Source: Fonticula alba ATCC 38817 (lineage: Eukaryota; Protista; Nucleariida). From it: a DNA stretch of 40,131 nucleotides. The notes below the pieces were generated by a model. The model was not told the origin of the DNA. It saw only the letters and a list, made by a program, of their open reading frames with translations, and did no database searches. Location: NCBI GenBank assembly GCA_000388065.2, contig KB932217.1, one strand, 5' to 3'. Of this stretch, positions 20,368 to 27,758 are shown in pieces; the first letter of the stretch is position 1, and the number at the start of each line of letters is the position of its first letter. The translations under genes and the position numbers were made by a program.

Positions 20368-21065
20368 CTAAAGGTCAAACATGTCTTCGTTCTTCTTTTC
20401 CATCCAGGAGGACTGTCCCATGAGATTGTCGTCGATGAACGAAAGTTGCGAGCCACGCTGCGACCGGAAGGGCGACGCGACCCCCGACCGGGCGCCGCTG
20501 AGGGTCGGCGAGAAGCCCGGCTGCGAGGGCCCCATGTAGATGGTGGTGGAGCCAGTTCCAGCGGTCGAGGGGTCTGGTAGGGTGCTAGAGTCCCGGCAGA
20601 AGAAGAAAAAAAGGGCGCACGCGCACACCGCAGAGCAGGAACATCAGTCAGACAATCTCCAGGGGGGGGGGGGGCAGAATGCCCACCAGGGGGGCACGGC
20701 AATATGGATGTACGCACTTCCGGCCGGAGGTGGAGGCCGATGGTGGCCCGATGATGTCGTGCTGCTGGCTGGAGGAAGTAGCGGGACGGACAGATCCGGC
20801 CAGGTGAGAGGAGGGCGGAGGGGGCAAGAGGGGGGCGGGGTCAAAAAAAAAAAAAGAATGGCAAGAAGCAAGTGATGACCAGGCAGAGGCAGCACGCCAG
20901 GGACCCTACCGCGCGAGAATCGACCGACTGAGCTGCTCCGAATCATGGAGCAACGCCTCGCTGTCGCGAAGAATGCGATCCACATCAGACAAGGTGCCGA
21001 TGGTGGAGTCAAACTTGGGTGCGGCGGTGGTCAGGCCAGCGGTGGTGCTGGACGAGGGCCCATGA

Positions 21066-21111
<46 letters not shown>

Positions 21112-21443
21112 TCTGTTGGTGCTGAGGTTGTTGTTGATGCTGCTGGCCGGCGGCCATGGTCTGCTGCGCAGCCCCCTCGGCCACGGGGATGTCGATCGTG
21201 CGGCGGGCCCCGAGGGCCGAGGCCGACCAAAGCCGGTTAACACGTTTCAGATCGGCGACCTGCTCGCGGGGATGATGGCATGGTCAGAAACGCGTCAGAC
21301 GGACAGGGGAGCCACAATCGGTTTCAGGGACAGCAAAAGGAGCGAGGACCGGCCGATCCAGCTCCCCCTCAGCGCACCGAGACATTGTAGAGCAGAGCGA
21401 TCCCCTCGAGGGTGTCCAAAGGGGTCACCGTGTGTTTGAGCAT
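20368..21443 (-). CDS. Intracellular LysM-domain protein (LYSMD1/2-like), exons 21443-21378, 21259-20910, 20768-20718, 20584-20368 (~227 aa; a further 5' exon is possible)
   Basis: Spliced LysM: LKHTVTPLDTLEGIALLYNVS|VADLKRVNRLWSASALGARRTIDIPV. Then poly-Gln, a short helical segment, and a C-terminus ending MEKKNEDMFDL. No signal peptide or TM segment. Confidence 0.85.
21071..21110 (-). repeat. (CAG)n poly-glutamine repeat within the LysM gene
   Basis: ctgctgctg... run on the + strand; similar runs at ~9346-9382 (bHLH) and ~16600-16640 (cyclin). Confidence 0.9.
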
Positions 21444-21768
21444 CCGGGCAGGGGCAGAGCGGGGAGGGGGGGGGGGAGGCGGCGAAAAGGACAGACGCAA
21501 GTGATGGAAAAGAAGGGGCAGGGGGAGGGGGGGGGGAACACATTATCTACCTGGGCGCAAGCCCGACACGCGCCGGTCCGGTGCGTGAAAACCATGGTCA
21601 CCTCGGCCCCGTACACCCCGGGGGAAGCCGGCCCCGAAGAAGATCTGACCATCCCCGGGGGTGGGCATAAAAATGCGTACTGCGCGGGCGGCCTGCTCAC
21701 GGGTGCGGCCACCAGGAAAACGGGGGAGAAGTCGGGTAATGAATCTGTGTGTGTGTGCGGGGGGGGGG

Positions 21769-21838
21769 NNNNNNNNNNNNNNNNNNNNNNNNNNNNNNNN
21801 NNNNNNNNNNNNNNNNNNNNNNNNNNNNNNNNNNNNNN
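21769..21838. other. Assembly gap (N run)
   Basis: Ns in sequence. Confidence 1.
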
Positions 21839-21911
21839 CCCCCCCCCCCAGGGCCCGGGCTCTATTTATTGTTTATTCCCACGCCGAGCGCGTGCCGCGG
21901 CAGTCGCGTGA

Positions 21912-24900
21912 TCACACAAAGTGGACCAGACGGCAAGGGACCGGACAGGTGTGCGAGAAGACCGCGGCCCGGGGCGTCCGCGAGCAGGAATAATCCCCCA
22001 GGCGGGCATGGGAGACCTCGGGATTGTGGAGGAGGAACTCGCGCTTGGCCAGACGCAAGAATTCCCGGATGAACCCATCGGTGAAGGCATGGTCGCGGAT
22101 GACATCGCGATGTCCAAGGCCGTCAATCTCCAGCACAATCACATGGCTATCATCCTCGGTGTCTGGGTTTTGGGCCTTGTGGTTGGTGTTGTGTGCGCGT
22201 GTGCGTGTACCGCGGGGGCGGAGCGGGGAGAGGGGAGGCCGGGCGGGCGGGGCGGGCGGGGCGGGGGAGGCCGCAAGTTTCGCCGCGAGAGGCAGGGCGG
22301 GAGGGGCAAAAGGTGAGTGGCGAATCGCCGCGAAGGGTGCGGGGCCCGCGTGGGCGAGGGCAGCAGGTCAGGCAAGGGGGCCCCATGGCCGGAGCAGACT
22401 GGTGGATCGCCGATGAAAGCGCAAGCCGGCGAGAAGCAGCAGCAGCAGCAGCAGCAGCATACCTTGCGAGTGGACTGGTATCGCGAGTAGGAGGACTGGG
22501 ACTTGTGGAATTGCTGCAGGAGGTCCAAGTGCACGAAGCCCGACTGGGCAAGAGTCCCACCGAGGTCCTGGTACAGTTTGGAGATGAGGGTGTCCACGTC
22601 GCCGGCCGAGCGAGCGGGGATATTCTTCACCTGGACATTGTCGTGGTGCCAGGTGTGCGACCAAGAGAGCGAGGCATACGGCACGGTCTGGGGACAGGGG
22701 AGACAGGAGGGTAAGTACGAATGGCGAGCACCGGGCCGGTCGGCGGCCAACCATCAACCAGACAGCGAGAGCAGGTACCCCATCGCCGGACTTCGGATAG
22801 CGCGACTGGCCGATGATCGCGGAGCTGGGCAGAAGACTGTGGGAACTGGTGGCCAGGATCTTGCCGCCACTCGATTCGAAAATCTCCGACTCCATGATGA
22901 GGGACATCTTGCCATTGTTCCGCGTCACTGTGGTGCAAGGAGGGAGGAGGAAGAACGAGTGAAAGAGAGGTCAGGGGAGGGCAACGAGCGGGCAAAGCCA
23001 CCGGCACATTGAGGGGGGAGGGGGGGATTCGGAGAAGACCACACGCACCCGCCTTATAGTGATATCCAAGGTCGGTTTGGAGGTTCCGCCCATAGATGGT
23101 GAGGATCTGCCGGATGGGAGGTCGAGCGGGGCCCTCCCGCTCGAGTTCCAGCCACACCGGGTCGCGGAAGTAGAATTTGTCCAAGGCCTGGTAGAATTTG
23201 TCGTATTCCGAGTCGCTCAGCTAAACCAGGTGGGTGAGTGGGAGAATGAGGGGGGAGCAAAAGCAAGAGCAGGAAGAATCCCATACCATGGCATGCAGCG
23301 TCCGATACATCTGGCCGGAGATGATTTCCGAGGGGCTGAAGGTGGTGGTGGTGCCGTTTTCGGCCTTGATGACGACAAGATGATCCGGCCACAGGGAGGG
23401 GGCATTGCCGAGGGTGGTGTTCGAGTGTGCGGGAACCAGGCTATTTTCCCGGTGCACAAGGGGGAGGCAAAAGGAGGGAAAGTCAGCCGGGGCTGCGGCA
23501 AGCGCGCGGGAACATGCAAGCACCATGGGGCGTACTTTTCGGCGATCGTGATGTTGGAGGGCAGGAGGAAGTGTGCACTCGAGAAAGACACGCCCATCAG
23601 GCGCGAGTCCATGGAATTGATTGGCAGGGAGAAACCCACACCGGAAATCATGCCACGGACCGATTGAACAGACCCCAGCAGCGGCGGGGCCACGGACTGA
23701 GTGTGCACGCCCGCGAGGGCAGGCGTGAGGGAGGGGGGGGGAAGGTGAGGAACCAGACCGGCGACCTGGGGCGCAAGCAAGTCCGACATACCACAAACAT
23801 CCAAATGTGCGCGTCAAACCATTCCTCATGGATCTTCGGATAGTGAAGCTTCATCCACTCGACAAAGTACAGGAACAACTTGCAGCCCATCGAGTGGCAC
23901 AGGGCAATGGCCGGGTTGCGGTTCATGCGGACCGTATGCTGCGAGGACCATGCAAGCGATCGACCAGTCAGCGGCGGGCGCCGGAATGAGCATGCAAAAT
24001 GATGGCATCCAAGCGTGGGGCCTACCTCAATGTCGAACTTCATCTTGGAAAAGAGGGCATCCCGGTCCTCGAGCAGCTTCGGCGCGATGCGCCAGTCATA
24101 TGGCAGAGCCAGCATGCTGGAGATGTCGTAGCTAAAGTGGTGGGCCATGTAGTAGACCAGGTTCCGGAAGATGGCCGTCACCGGGGCCAGCACACCATTC
24201 AACAGGTCATAGATGGCACCCATGCCTGCGAAGGGGGGAGGAGCACCATGTGCATCGGGTCAGGGACACCTCCACGGAGAAGAGCAGGACAAGCGGGCAG
24301 GCAAAGGAACGCACCCTCCTCGGGCCGGAGCTTGCAGCCCTCTGGGTCTGTCTGGTCCACGATGTCCAGCATCATGCACTTAATCCAGCATGCCTCCTCG
24401 AAGAGGTTGTGGTGAAGGACCTTCTCGAGGTTGAGCCAGACGACGTCGCCGATCTCGATGCTACGCCGCGGCCAGGGGGAGGGGAGTGCAGGCCAAGCGA
24501 TCAGGGTTAGGGGAGGGGGGGGAGGGGGGGGGAAAAAAAACCCGACAAAGCACGAGGAGAAAGGAGGGCGCACTTCATGGCCGAGCAGGACTTCCGCCGC
24601 CAGGCAATCAGGCGCGACGAGGCGAAGCCCGGGATGTAGAGGATGGGCTTCTTCCGGCGCTTCTCAATGTGCGCCTGAATGAAGCGCTTTTCCAGGATCG
24701 ACCGGAGCAAGACGCTCTCCTGCAAAAGCAAGTTCAGCGCGGGCGCATTGGCTACCCACACGGCGGCGGGGGTCTCCGAAGAAACGACCAAGTTGATGTT
24801 GTGCCGGCGCCCATGGAGCATGTTCATGCCGCCTGAGATGGATGAAAAAGTATCCTCCGGGTGAGTTTCACACAGCGAGATGCAATGTCCCGACCGACCG

Positions 24901-25898
24901 AGAGTAGGTCGGGGAGGGCACAACAAGAGGCGACATACCGATGGAATCCCCCCGGAAGAAGGAGCTAATATACTCGGCGGCATGCTCGGGATTCTCGCCG
25001 GGAGTGGCGGAGAGGGTGCCCTGCTCGACGATCAGAAAGTGTGTGAAGCCATCCTGCAGCCCGAATGCCGGCCGGTGAGTGAGACGAAGGCTGACCGGAG
25101 AGAAGGGACAGGCTGACGCACATCGAGCACCAGGCCCTCGCCCGTCTGAAGGGTCTGCAATGTGAAAAGCTGCGACAGCTGGGTGATCATCTCCGGGGAG
25201 TAGATCAGTCGGTCCGAGAAGAAGGGGTTCGCCGAAAAGAGGACGCTCATCTGGAAGACAGAAGGGCAGTCATTCGGAAGGTGGTGGGGGCCACAAGCGG
25301 AGGAGCAGCGGAAAAAAGTGGTGAGGCCGGGAGACGAGCAGATCGAAGAGGGGCCACAAAATCCCGAACGCACCTCCTGGTTGTATGAGAAAGGCCGGAC
25401 ACTGATGTACCAGGAGTTGAGGAAGGAAAAAAGCAAGTACGACATGAAGAAGGCCTGTGACCAGGGGCAGGGGGGGAGGGGGACAAACACAAAGGCATCT
25501 GTGAATACGGGTGGGCGAGCATGAGGCGGCGCCGAGGGCTTACGCACGGAGAAGAGGGAGAGTGTAAAGAAGAAGAGACCAGACAGGTTGCCTCGGAAAC
25601 GCTGTTCAGAGTCCGCAGAAAACTGGCCACGGCTTTTCCGGGGGGAAAAGCCCGAGCCTCCTCCCCCGTCAGCATCGCCTTTCCGGCCAAAGAGGCCATC
25701 CTGCTGGAAGGAATCCGACAGCAGGGTAAGTGCGTCGGTCGGGAATTGCAGGTCGCGAATGGAGGAGGCCGAAGAGTCGAAGTAATCCCCGAAGGGGGGA
25801 GGCGGGCGCGCTAGCAAGTGTTCACGCGAGGAGAAATCCACCGACAGGGCCCTACGACGCCGTGGGGCTCGGGGGACATCGGAGTCTAGATTGCTCAT
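21912..25898 (-). CDS. LCAT-family acyltransferase (PSAT1-like) with N-terminal TM segment and cNMP-binding-like domain; 14 exons: 25898-25548, 25454-25374, 25250-25122, 25053-24939, 24832-24574, 24460-24315, 24225-24026, 23938-23792, 23696-23536, 23440-23287, 23220-23049, 22927-22779, 22687-22463, 22175-21912 (~850 aa)
   Basis: LCAT motifs: ILYIPGFASSRL, VWLN, CWIKCMMLD, LPYDWR, nucleophile CHSMG, APPLLGS, SGDG|TVPYASLSW and GHRDVI. All 13 introns are GT-AG and phase-consistent, summing to 2553 nt. The last acceptor could be 22175 or 22154. Confidence 0.9.
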
Positions 25899-27758
25899 GA
25901 CATGGATTGCGAGTCATAAAGAAGGGAGTGGAAAAGACAAACCAAAGAGAGAACAATGTGGGAGGAAGGAGGGCAAGGAAGTGGCATGCAGGGGAGGGAT
26001 GGAGAAATCCCTCCGCCTGGTGGATGGACGAGGGGGGTGCCCGATCGACCACCAGGCCCGAAGACCGAGGCCGGGGCCTGGGCACAGGGGCCTGGGCGCA
26101 GGGGCTTGTAACAGAACGTGGGGCAGGATTAGATTAGCAGCAAGAAGACAGAGAGGCATAAATATGCCATGTATTTTATTGGATGTGGTTTATTTTTCCA
26201 GTAGATATAATGACAGAAAAGTCCAACAAATGTGATTTTAGTAAAGTATGATCTATAATTAGACAGGGATGGTATTTAAACAAGCTAATTTGAGCATATT
26301 CCAAAATCATCATTCTTTGAGGCTTAATAAGGTCATTGTTTTTCAGGGTGCCGTTGTGACTGATCGATTGCCAAGCCCGGGCCTCGCCAAAAGAAAGGGT
26401 GCTCCTTGGTGGGCATCTGTTCGCCCAAAGGGATACTTAATCACGCCCTCCCCTTCTCCCCCTCCCGGCGGCTTTCCTCCTTGTCAAGCCACCCTCCTTT
26501 TTGCACTCCCGATCTCATGCCCTCTTTCGAGACCTTGATCTCTTTGGCCAATCTGGAAGCCCCTCTGTCTGGCCTCTTCCGGCATTGCTCTTTAACACCT
26601 GCCAGCTCGGTTCCGACTGAACCAGAGACGACTTCCCCTGAAGAGCCTCCCTTCCGGAATGCCCCCACCCACAGGGCCCTCTCGGCTCTTGCCAAGGATC
26701 TCATCTATCTTTTCCCCCCGGCCAGACGGCCCACTGCCTGAGCCATCACCCTGGGTCGCCTTTATTTTTTTTTCCCCGCTTCTCCTTCCTTGAACTCCTC
26801 AAAGCCGATCCACCTCGTGTGTCCACGGGCTACCTGGGGCGAGGGGTCTCTCTGCAAACCAGTGACCGGTCCCAGGAAAGGCTGCCGGACAATATCTCCT
26901 CTCTCCTGGCGGCTTTTTGGATTGAGATGCCTCAGGCAGGAGGGCCTTGTGTGTGTATCTCCGGTCAGGGGTGGATTGACATGGGGGTGGCCTTTTGAAC
27001 TTCTCCGGGAGTTCCCCCTCGTCGGGGAGAAACAGCCTCAATGGGAGATATTGCCGGACACGGGGAGAGGTTACTCGAGGGTGTCGGAGGAGGAGGAGGG
27101 GGTGGAACCGAACGAGTGAGCGGCCACGCTGGCGTGACGAGCCTCACAGCCCTCCCTCGTCGGTGCTCATCACGCGCGTGCACACAATGCCTGTCCTACT
27201 CCTCGGTGCCATTGCTCCAGGCCCCATCTTCCCGAGGTCAGCCACGCAAGCCCCTCGCGACGGCCTCGCCTCCTTTCCGACAGCTTTGCTTCCGACCCCC
27301 CAGGCGGGAGGAAGGGGGGGATGCCAGAGCATGTGTTTTTTCTGCCGACCCCAGCTCCTCTTGCATCAGGCCGAATCTGCTCCCTGGCCGGCTGAGCCCA
27401 CCACGGCACTTGGATCAAGTGCCGCGCCAGCCGGCACACATCAGGGATCGCGCTGAGCCCTCCTCAAGCGCAACCCCGCCCCCAGGCAAAGACAACCAAA
27501 CACGAATGTCCCACCGATCTGGCCAGCGCCAGGGCAAAGGGCGCCATCCCAGCGGCCGCCTCGCGGGTGATGTGGCCGACACCCTCTGCACCGTGACGCG
27601 GCGGCCCAGGGTGCCTGACCTCGGGTCATGCAACCCCCGCAATTGCCCCGGGGACGCCGTCTGGTTCTCTCGACATGATTGGGAGTGTCTATTGTCGACC
27701 GTGGCGAAAGACCGACCCTTGTGAACAAAAGGCAGGTCTCGAGGCGCGACCTGCGGCG

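What the first reader, a model, noticed from the sequence alone, without database searches (positions are those of the whole stretch)
21912..25898. TM + cyclic-nucleotide-binding domain fused to an LCAT/PSAT acyltransferase: candidate second-messenger-regulated lipid acyltransferase
Seen: splicing exons 3-5 yields ITQLSQLFTLQTLQTGEGLVLD|DGFTHFLIVEQGTLSATPGENPEHAAEYISSFFRGDSI|GGMNMLHGRRHNINLVVSSETPAAVWVANAPALNLLLQESVLLRSILEK. This follows the CNB/CAP_ED pattern: helix, G-E-x-(I/L), F-x-I-x-x-G, G-D-x-x-G, phosphate-binding cassette, beta strands, hinge helix. It lies between a TM segment (GLFFFTLSLFSAFFMSYLLFSFL) and, within the same exon 5, the LCAT start KKPILYIPGFASS. Established: TM-CNB-lipase architecture is known for NTE/PNPLA6 with a patatin domain; I know of no described CNB-LCAT fusion. 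The cassette lacks the canonical Glu (GE to GG) and the PR-x-A Arg, so the ligand may not be cAMP/cGMP. Inference: an ER enzyme whose sterol/lipid esterification is allosterically gated by a small ligand, convergent on the NTE design.
Basis: partly seen in the sequence, partly recalled or inferred. Interest (0 to 1): 0.8.

Follow-up and report, generated by a model that had tools for sequence, protein, structure and literature searches.

The report
Membrane lipid acyltransferase with degenerate nucleotide-sensor domain
This Fonticula alba gene really encodes a membrane-anchored lipid acyltransferase carrying a domain with the fold of a cyclic-nucleotide sensor, but that domain lacks the key nucleotide-binding residues and probably faces the ER lumen, so cAMP/cGMP control is unlikely.

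Summary
A 14-exon minus-strand gene (21912-25898, all introns GT-AG) encodes an 850-aa protein, identical to Fonticula alba H696_06047. Transcript contigs carry all the exon joints and link the 5' exons to the lipase body in one mRNA.

The protein has one transmembrane segment (aa 106-132), a cyclic-nucleotide-binding (CNB) fold (aa ~141-286) and an intact LCAT/PDAT-type Ser-Asp-His body (Pfam LCAT E 3e-50).

The CNB call is below Pfam's cut-off in F. alba itself (12-15 bits against 27.5). Three other results establish it:
- An ortholog passes the Pfam cut-off.
- A profile of five lineages hits only CNB proteins in PDB (best E 2e-15).
- An AlphaFold model (pLDDT 78) matches MloK1, HCN, PKG and PKA CNB domains.

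The phosphate-binding cassette lacks its Glu, and no ortholog has a conserved Arg. Charge bias, a conserved LCAT-type cysteine pair, glycosylation sequons and PDAT-like structure all suggest the Lro1/PDAT topology: N-terminus in the cytosol, CNB and catalytic domain in the lumen.

My reading is therefore a PDAT-like enzyme with a conserved CNB-homology module, not a cAMP/cGMP switch. UniRef already names the protein as CNB-domain-containing. I found no paper on the fusion, and the scan had not noted it on other DNA.

The parts
21912..25898 (-). Complete CDS of Fonticula alba H696_06047: 14 exons, 850 aa, stop codon included
   Evidence: Splice model. Identical to P0001. Joints seen in transcript contigs.
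25584..25898 (-). N-terminal tail, aa 1-105: low-complexity, Arg-rich (RRRR at aa 13-16). Predicted cytosolic.
   Evidence: Sequence. In-frame stop upstream of the ATG. Low pLDDT and no Pfam hit.
25410..25583 (-). Single transmembrane anchor, aa 106-132, split by intron 1
   Evidence: Only segment with a 19-mer Kyte-Doolittle mean above 1.6. Joint 25453|25547 in RNA.
24651..25385 (-). CNB-homology domain, aa 141-286 (exons 2-5): N-helix, helix A, beta-barrel, cassette helix, helices B and C. Helix C runs directly into the first strand of the hydrolase.
   Evidence: PF00027 sub-threshold. Profile against PDB, E down to 2e-15. AlphaFold2 pLDDT 78. Foldseek.
24789..24951 (-). Degenerate phosphate-binding cassette, aa 222-240 (GDSIGGMNMLHGRRHNINL), split by intron 4. 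G227 replaces the canonical Glu and H236 sits at the canonical Arg position.
   Evidence: HMM alignment to PKA RI-beta. Ortholog alignments. Coordinates.
22026..24650 (-). LCAT/PDAT-type alpha/beta-hydrolase body, aa 287-813 (exons 5-14)
   Evidence: PF02450 E 3.4e-50. LPLA2 and LCAT PDB hits. Atlas structure match to PDAT clusters.
23891..23893 (-). Catalytic Ser443 in the HSMG motif, followed by the Met typical of PDAT
   Evidence: Aligned to the HSMG of LPLA2; the 4x92 sequence reads HAMG at that place. Conserved in orthologs.
22782..22784 (-). Predicted catalytic Asp687 (GDGTV)
   Evidence: Motif conserved in L001, L004, L005, L008 and L002. Assignment as the catalytic Asp is by motif position only.
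22110..22112 (-). Predicted catalytic His785 (G-H-R-D)
   Evidence: The 'HR(D/N)' motif is conserved in L001, L004, L005 and L008. Assignment is by motif position only.
24388..24587 (-). Cys308 and Cys336, the counterparts of the two cysteines that I recall as the LCAT Cys50-Cys74 disulfide
   Evidence: Both aligned to the cysteines of LPLA2 and LCAT. Conserved in orthologs.

Best explanation
The gene encodes a single-pass, type II (N-terminus cytosolic) ER-membrane enzyme of the LCAT family, closest to phospholipid:diacylglycerol acyltransferases (PDAT/Lro1).

Shown:
- one mRNA;
- one TM anchor;
- an intact Ser443/Asp687/His785 triad and a Cys308/Cys336 pair;
- a true CNB fold inserted between the anchor and the catalytic domain;
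- the same arrangement in at least four other eukaryotic lineages, under purifying selection;
- a remodelled cassette, GDS(I/Y)GG(L/M)(N/H), without the Glu and without a conserved Arg.

Inferred:
- The CNB-fold domain and the catalytic domain both lie in the ER lumen.
- The enzyme moves an acyl chain from a phospholipid to a neutral-lipid acceptor (diacylglycerol or sterol), or to water.
- The CNB-fold domain is a CNB-homology module that does not bind cAMP or cGMP in the canonical way.
- Because its C-helix runs within a few residues into strand 1 of the hydrolase, next to the disulfide-bonded membrane-binding region, it most likely acts as a conformational stalk or regulator. It would set how the catalytic domain docks on the luminal leaflet or how its lid opens, as the ligand-less CNB-homology domains of KCNH channels do for their pores.
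For: Architecture and transcription.

LCAT body: PF02450 E 3.4e-50. The Ser and both Cys align to LPLA2/LCAT. Ser, Asp, His and Cys motifs are conserved in orthologs.

PDAT affinity: the Atlas structure search gives TM 0.74 to a 669-aa plant cluster and 0.65 to fungal PDAT, against 0.60 for LCAT/LPLA2. PMC9874167 lists a single TMD, a luminal bulk, the S-D-H triad and the Ser-Met pair as PDAT features.

CNB fold.

Degenerate cassette in all lineages.

Topology:
- Only one hydrophobic segment, with net charge +3 on the N side and -1 on the C side in F. alba, and +4 against 0 in P0005. L006 has RRR on the N side and an acidic C side.
- The 105-aa tail lies before the anchor.
- There are three sequons in the F. 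alba LCAT body and 3-4 in the CNB domain of each ortholog.

Functional constraint: pN/pS is 0.17 and 0.02 across the CNB region between L005 and L008.
Against: - The topology is predicted, not measured, and the 15-residue charge difference in F. alba itself is zero.
- F. alba has no sequon in its CNB domain.
- Missing canonical residues does not prove missing binding. As I recall, Popeye domains bind cAMP with non-canonical motifs, and they are among the nearest folds.
- F. alba and L006 have an Arg one position before the canonical site.
- The PDAT assignment rests on predicted-structure similarity and motifs, not on a tree with reference PDAT, PSAT and LCAT sequences.
- No model of the CNB-LCAT interface was obtained: the full-length single-sequence model had pLDDT 35.6.
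- The proposed stalk or regulator role is inference only.
Confidence: 0.5

Rival explanations
1. The CNB domain faces the cytosol, binds cAMP or cGMP (or a close analogue) and allosterically switches the acyltransferase, converging on the NTE/PNPLA6 design.
For: True CNB fold with helices B and C leading into the catalytic domain. CNB domains fused to lipases or acyltransferases exist: NTE (PMC6995513), and Rv2565 and the acetyltransferase Pat among the hits. F. alba has Arg234/Arg235 next to the canonical Arg position.
Against: The cassette Glu is Gly in all lineages, and no Arg or Lys is conserved at or near the canonical position. Charge bias, the conserved cysteine pair, the sequons and the PDAT/Lro1 precedent all point to a luminal location (PMC10716787). 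Even NTE's CNB domains have no shown cAMP binding (PMC6995513).
Confidence: 0.1
2. The domain is a genuine small-molecule sensor, but for a ligand other than cAMP/cGMP that is present in the ER lumen or secretory pathway (for example a lipid headgroup, a sugar-phosphate or another metabolite). Ligand binding gates the enzyme.
For: The cassette is not decayed but remodelled and conserved as GDS(I/Y)GG(L/M)(N/H), with very low pN/pS (0.02) over this half. From my own knowledge, the CNB/CRP superfamily is known to bind other ligands (heme, 2-oxoglutarate, c-di-GMP).
Against: No ligand can be inferred from the sequence. The loop after the cassette helix is variable between lineages. A conserved cassette helix could equally be structural or a protein-contact surface.
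Confidence: 0.25
3. The CNB fold is a passive spacer or a remnant of domain shuffling, with no regulatory role. The protein is simply a PDAT with a longer stalk.
For: PDAT N-terminal regions are described as the variable part of the protein (PMC9874167). The F. alba domain scores below Pfam's threshold. Identity between lineages is lower in the CNB part (about 30%) than in the neighbouring LCAT part, which reaches 62% over aa 285-480 against P0005.
Against: The domain is retained with the same boundaries, and a shared intron position, in five lineages whose GC content ranges from 0.26 to 0.68. There is purifying selection and a confident compact fold.
Confidence: 0.15

Closest known systems
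PDAT / yeast Lro1p (phospholipid:diacylglycerol acyltransferase, LCAT family PF02450)
   Same: N-terminal tail, single TM anchor and a large LCAT-type domain. S-D-H triad with Ser-Met. The family's conserved cysteine pair. Best predicted-structure matches are PDAT clusters (PMC9874167, PMC10716787).
   Different: About 150 residues with a CNB fold lie between the anchor and the catalytic domain. The structure matches to PDAT clusters do not cover that part. Activity and acceptor are untested.
NTE / PNPLA6 / Swiss cheese, and mycobacterial Rv2565 (CNB domains + patatin lipase)
   Same: Order of parts in NTE: TM, CNB fold(s), lipid esterase. Rv2565 is the top Swiss-Prot fold match for the CNB model. 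NTE's CNB domains also lack shown cAMP binding (PMC6995513).
   Different: The catalytic domain is patatin, not an LCAT-type alpha/beta-hydrolase. NTE has three CNB domains, this protein one. As I recall, NTE's domains face the cytosol, whereas this protein's are predicted to face the lumen. No homology outside the CNB fold.
CNB-homology domains of KCNH (EAG/ERG) and plant AKT1/SKOR channels
   Same: A CNB fold that does not work through canonical cyclic-nucleotide binding (from my own knowledge) but couples conformation to the attached machine. AKT1 is among the profile hits.
   Different: Those are cytosolic and attached to ion channels. An 'intrinsic ligand' strand was not looked for here.
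cAMP-regulated acetyltransferase Pat (CNB + GNAT; PDB 4orf, 4oll, 4onu)
   Same: A CNB domain fused to an acyl-group transferase. It is hit by the family profile (E 7e-4).
   Different: Soluble, bacterial, with a GNAT fold and an acetyl-CoA donor. From my own knowledge it has a canonical cAMP site.
Human LCAT and LPLA2 (PLA2G15), solved structures 4xwg and 4x90
   Same: Homologous catalytic core over aa 287-530 (E 1e-10 and 1e-6). The Ser and both cysteines align.
   Different: From my own knowledge those are soluble secreted or lysosomal enzymes with signal peptides. They have no TM anchor and no CNB fold, and lack the long PDAT-type insertions.

Membership tests
LCAT family (Pfam PF02450) | Profile match above the gathering score | tested here: met
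   171.8 bits against a cut-off of 21, aa 318-722.
LCAT family (Pfam PF02450) | Nucleophile Ser in a G/A/C-H-S-x-G elbow | tested here: met
   Ser443 in CHSMG aligns to AHSMG of LPLA2. Conserved in orthologs.
LCAT family (Pfam PF02450) | Asp and His of the triad | tested here: inconclusive
   The GDGTV (D687) and GHRD (H785) motifs are present and conserved in orthologs. The PDB sequence alignments did not reach them, so the assignment is by motif.
LCAT family (Pfam PF02450) | Cysteine pair equivalent to LCAT Cys50-Cys74 | tested here: met
   C308 and C336 align to both cysteines in LPLA2 and LCAT. Conserved in orthologs. The bond itself was not tested.
PDAT subfamily (Lro1/PDAT1) | Single N-terminal TM anchor with the bulk of the protein after it | tested here: met
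   One hydrophobic segment, aa 106-132. Feature as described in PMC9874167 and PMC10716787.
PDAT subfamily (Lro1/PDAT1) | Catalytic domain in the ER lumen | not testable with these tools
   Predicted only, from charge bias, sequons and the cysteine pair.
PDAT subfamily (Lro1/PDAT1) | Closer to PDATs than to LCAT, LPLA2 or PSAT | tested here: inconclusive
   Atlas predicted-structure TM 0.74 and 0.65 to PDAT-size or PDAT-named clusters, against 0.60 for LCAT/LPLA2 and 0.46 for PSAT.
PDAT subfamily (Lro1/PDAT1) | Acyl transfer from phospholipid to diacylglycerol | not testable with these tools
   Needs an enzyme assay or yeast complementation.
CNB domain (Pfam PF00027 / CAP_ED) | Profile match above the gathering score | tested here: not met
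   The F. alba protein scores 12.4 bits (whole) and 15.5 bits (aa 100-300) against a cut-off of 27.5. Ortholog P0005 scores 27.8 bits, just above it.
CNB domain (Pfam PF00027 / CAP_ED) | Homology by family profile | tested here: met
   The A2 profile finds 89 PDB sequences at E<=1. All 60 shown are CNB-domain proteins, best 2.1e-15. The A1 profile gives 18 of 18 CNB proteins.
CNB domain (Pfam PF00027 / CAP_ED) | Beta-barrel with cassette helix, flanked by helices A, B and C | tested here: met
   AlphaFold2 pLDDT 78.3, pTM 0.75. Foldseek top hits are MloK1, HCN, PKG and PKA CNB domains with TMq 0.6-0.68. AlphaFold DB hits are also CNB-domain or CNB-like (Popeye) proteins wherever the name tells.
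CNB domain (Pfam PF00027 / CAP_ED) | Cassette Gly-Glu and Arg-(Ser/Thr) that hold the ribose and the cyclic phosphate | tested here: not met
   G227 replaces the Glu and H236 sits at the Arg position. There is no conserved basic residue in five lineages.
CNB domain (Pfam PF00027 / CAP_ED) | Binding of cAMP or cGMP | not testable with these tools
   Needs a binding assay on the isolated domain.
NTE / PNPLA6 family | Patatin catalytic domain | tested here: not met
   Pfam on the whole protein lists only LCAT and sub-threshold cNMP_binding. The protein is not a member; only the order of parts is alike.

The most novel reading that the evidence does not exclude
A CNB-fold sensor working outside the cytosol. 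A luminal, remodelled CNB domain would bind a non-cyclic-nucleotide ligand of the ER or secretory pathway and gate a PDAT-type acyltransferase. That would be a new compartment and a new ligand class for this fold, and a new mode of control for acyl-CoA-independent neutral-lipid synthesis.
Probability: 0.2. Interest if true: 0.7.

Novelty: new variant of a known kind. Interest (0 to 1): 0.42.

Why it matters
PDAT/LCAT enzymes make neutral lipids or remodel phospholipids without acyl-CoA. Little is known about how their luminal catalytic domains are controlled beyond lid opening at the membrane.

A conserved CNB-fold module wired directly onto strand 1 of such an enzyme gives a concrete, testable handle. 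Delete or mutate it, test binding, map the topology.

It also adds a likely extracytosolic, cassette-degenerate example to the growing set of CNB-homology domains that do something other than bind cAMP or cGMP.

The reach is limited. The fusion appears only in Fonticula alba and a handful of uncultured eukaryotes, its automatic database name already flags the domain, and nothing here shows regulation.

Tried and rejected
- Pfam on single exons gave nothing for exons 3, 4 and 5 even at E<=10, because the pieces were too short. Only the whole protein or the family profile shows the domain.
- AlphaFold2 on the full-length single sequence was useless (pLDDT 35.6). I did not use it for any fold claim or search.
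- The word-index homolog searches, all three, returned only the protein itself, P0005 and P0006. I therefore could not collect reference PDAT, PSAT and LCAT sequences or build a tree.
- Raw-read RNA runs filed under the same species label (X12, X13) laid 0 and 1 reads. They are no test of expression.
- tblastx of the window against loci L001-L008 found no synteny outside the gene.
- Pfam on ten long neighbouring ORFs between 16 and 32 kb found nothing. In this GC-rich DNA most are probably spurious.
- The Atlas feature and structure searches found no large cluster carrying both PF00027 and PF02450.
- The apparent low-GC bins at 6-7 kb and 38-39 kb are runs of N, not AT-rich DNA.
- I rejected a cleavable signal peptide, because the hydrophobic segment starts at aa 106.
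- I rejected the idea that the 5' exons form a separate gene, because of the 2476-nt spliced contig.
Full report
**1. What is in the sequence**

Translating the minus strand of 21850-25950 in three frames and placing splice sites gives 14 exons:

| Exon | Window coordinates |
|---|---|
| 1 | 25898-25548 |
| 2 | 25454-25374 |
| 3 | 25250-25122 |
| 4 | 25053-24939 |
| 5 | 24832-24574 |
| 6 | 24460-24315 |
| 7 | 24225-24026 |
| 8 | 23938-23792 |
| 9 | 23696-23536 |
| 10 | 23440-23287 |
| 11 | 23220-23049 |
| 12 | 22927-22779 |
| 13 | 22687-22463 |
| 14 | 22175-21912 |

- All 13 introns are GT-AG. The CDS is 2553 nt and encodes 850 aa.
- An in-frame stop lies just upstream of the ATG at 25898.

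**2. Transcript evidence**

- Four small runs from 2012 hold 53-55% of the sampled words of the stretch. That is near the exonic share.
- Laid on 21850-26100, their contigs show 12 joints at exactly the predicted borders, each CT..AC on the plus strand, which is GT..AG on the minus strand.
- The thirteenth intron appears as adjacent pieces. It has a 3-nt ambiguity ('ctt' on both sides) that only the GT-AG choice resolves.
- One 2476-nt contig runs from 25764 to 21855, and another reaches 25989.
- Two large raw-read runs filed under the species label laid next to nothing and are no test.

**3. Identity**

- A phmmer search of 1.84 billion representatives with exon 5 alone returned five proteins. 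The best, P0001, is 850 aa and equals my model residue for residue.
- Its sources name it hypothetical protein H696_06047 of Fonticula alba. UniRef names it 'Cyclic nucleotide-binding domain-contai...'.
- The automatic annotation has therefore already flagged the domain. No paper in the searched library joins PDAT or LCAT with a CNB domain, and the single co-occurrence is a yeast lipid review.

**4. The catalytic body**

- Pfam LCAT (PF02450) covers aa 318-722 at E 3.4e-50.
- Against PDB sequences the best relatives are LPLA2 (4x90, E 1e-10) and LCAT (4xwg, E 1e-6).
- In those alignments Ser443 (CHSMG) sits on the nucleophile. The 4x92 sequence reads HAMG at that place.
- Cys308 and Cys336 sit on the family's two cysteines. 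As I recall, those cysteines form the Cys50-Cys74 disulfide in LCAT.
- GDGTV (Asp687) and G-H-R-D (His785) are present and conserved in the orthologs.
- The ESM Atlas holds a model of this very protein. Its body (aa 296-811) matches best a 669-aa plant cluster (TM 0.74) and a fungal cluster named PDAT (0.65). LCAT and LPLA2 come next at 0.60 and PSAT at 0.46.
- PDAT is described as a single-TMD protein with most of its mass in the ER lumen, an S-D-H triad and a Met after the Ser (PMC9874167). [quoted passage not shown] 2011, which I could not open).
- I therefore read the body as PDAT-like. The reserve is that I could not build a reference tree.

**5. Is the middle part a CNB domain?**

Yes, although the F. 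alba sequence alone would not prove it.

- PF00027 scores 12.4 bits on the whole protein and 15.5 bits on aa 100-300, against a cut-off of 27.5.
- The metagenomic ortholog P0005 scores 27.8 bits, next to an LCAT match.
- A scan of JGI metagenomes, tblastn and an HMM of the N-terminal half (E 1e-11 to 1e-19) show the full arrangement in further lineages of very different base composition:
  - group A: L001, L003, L004 (= P0005), GC about 0.5;
  - group B: L005, L008 (= P0004), GC 0.62-0.68;
  - group C: L006, L007 (= P0003), GC 0.26-0.30;
  - P0002, a fragment, may be a further lineage.
- F. alba and groups B and C share the phase-1 intron inside the cassette, after GDS(I/Y).
- A profile of the ten-row alignment A2 finds 89 PDB sequences at E<=1. 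All 60 shown are CNB-domain proteins: PKG 2e-15, PKA regulatory subunits about 1e-11 to 1e-9, then Pat, CRP and AKT1.
- AlphaFold2 on A2 gives pLDDT 78.3 and pTM 0.75, with the expected order of helices and strands.
- Foldseek finds at least 500 PDB matches. All 50 listed are CNB domains of MloK1, HCN, PKG, PKA and related proteins, TMq about 0.5-0.68.
- In AlphaFold DB the nearest entries are the NTE-family protein Rv2565, Popeye domains and HCN channels, and many proteins named CNB-domain-containing.
- Between L005 and L008, pN/pS is 0.17 in the first half of the domain and 0.02 in the second. The domain is kept by selection.

**6. Can it bind cAMP or cGMP?**

- In the HMM alignment to PKA RI-beta, the F. 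alba cassette GDSIGGMNMLHGRRHNINL lies on GGSFGELALIYGTPRAATV.
- The Glu is Gly227 and the Arg position is His236 (numbering).
- All orthologs have Gly-Gly. At and around the Arg position they have F/P, P/K, C/E or S/L, with no conserved basic residue.
- What is conserved instead is GDS(I/Y)GG(L/M)(N/H). The cassette is remodelled rather than decayed.
Across the family they argue against canonical cyclic-nucleotide binding.

**7. Which side of the membrane?**

- There is one hydrophobic segment only, 105 residues from the N-terminus, so it is an anchor and not a signal peptide.
- Net charge within 25 residues is +3 before the segment and -1 after it in F. alba, and +4 against 0 within 15 residues in P0005.
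- L006 has RRR just before its hydrophobic stretch and an acidic stretch after it.
- By the positive-inside rule the N-terminus is cytosolic and the CNB fold and catalytic body are luminal, as in Lro1p.
- Three further observations are consistent with this:
  - the conserved cysteine pair;
  - three sequons in the F. alba body;
  - 3-4 sequons in the CNB domain of each other lineage, against roughly one expected by chance (my estimate); F. alba itself has none there.
- This step is inference. I put it at about 0.7.

**8. Mechanism and rivals**

- My best reading is a PDAT-like enzyme whose luminal catalytic domain is carried on a CNB-homology module.
- The model's helix C (aa 266-286) ends at the Lys-Lys-Pro that begins strand 1 of the hydrolase. 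Any hinge movement of helices B and C would therefore act directly on the catalytic domain and on the neighbouring disulfide-bonded membrane-binding region.
- That is how I think the module works, as a stalk or regulator without cyclic nucleotide. I give it 0.5.
- Rivals:
  - a sensor for another, luminal ligand (0.25);
  - a passive spacer (0.15);

**9. Comparison and novelty**

- The order TM, CNB, lipid esterase is that of NTE, which has a TMD, three putative CNB domains and a patatin domain, with no evidence that cAMP binds (PMC6995513).
- Here the catalytic fold is different and the side of the membrane probably is too.
- CNB folds without nucleotide binding are known from KCNH and plant channels. 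CNB domains fused to transferases are known from Pat.
- No large Atlas cluster carries both Pfam families, and only five proteins in 1.84 billion representatives match exon 5.
- I rate this a new variant of a known kind, of moderate interest.

**10. Limits**

- There is no experimental topology, binding or activity data.
- There is no reference phylogeny and no model of the domain interface.
- The taxonomic origin of the metagenomic orthologs is unknown, and there is no synteny with the window.
- The neighbouring ORFs gave no Pfam match.

Noticed in passing
window 21749-21850: An assembly gap (N run 21769-21838) flanked by a poly-G run on one side and a poly-C run on the other lies about 60 nt beyond the stop codon. 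The transcript contigs reach 21855 and 21850 (the edge of the laid stretch), so the 3' UTR runs up to the gap and is probably cut short by it.
   Followed up: partly
window 22214-22272 and 22424-22465 (intron 13): A G-rich (GGGGC)n-like microsatellite and a (CAG)n run lie inside the longest intron. Read laying skipped both as repeats.
   Followed up: no
window 26101-26451: The only truly AT-rich island of the window (GC below 0.45 in a 60-75% GC context) lies about 110 nt upstream of the 5'-most transcript contig. It is unique within the window and may be a promoter region. The low-GC bins at 6-7 kb and 38-39 kb are N runs.
   Followed up: partly
L005:1071/1166, L008:1417/1518, L006:1309/1390 versus window 24939/24832: The phase-1 intron splitting the cassette after GDS(I/Y) is shared by F. 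alba and two metagenomic lineages. Introns at aa 361, 427 and 476/477 of the F. alba protein also recur there, and one near aa 311-316 in L006-L008 but not L005. Group A (L001, L003, L004) has lost most of them.
   Followed up: partly
L002:514-2256 (P0006): An LCAT-only relative (33% identity, no CNB part found on the contig) lies next to a PSP1-domain gene. It may represent the plain PDAT-like sister form.
   Followed up: no
window 20900-21250: Long CAG/CTG-type repeats give poly-Q, poly-A and poly-L ORFs on both strands just downstream of the gene. Whether any of them is coding was not examined.
   Followed up: no
runs X5-X24, X12 and X13 laid: Large 2026 RNA runs listed under the 'same species label' (organism B) gave 0 and 1 reads on this expressed gene. 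The label may not be the same organism as the 2012 runs (organism A).
   Followed up: no
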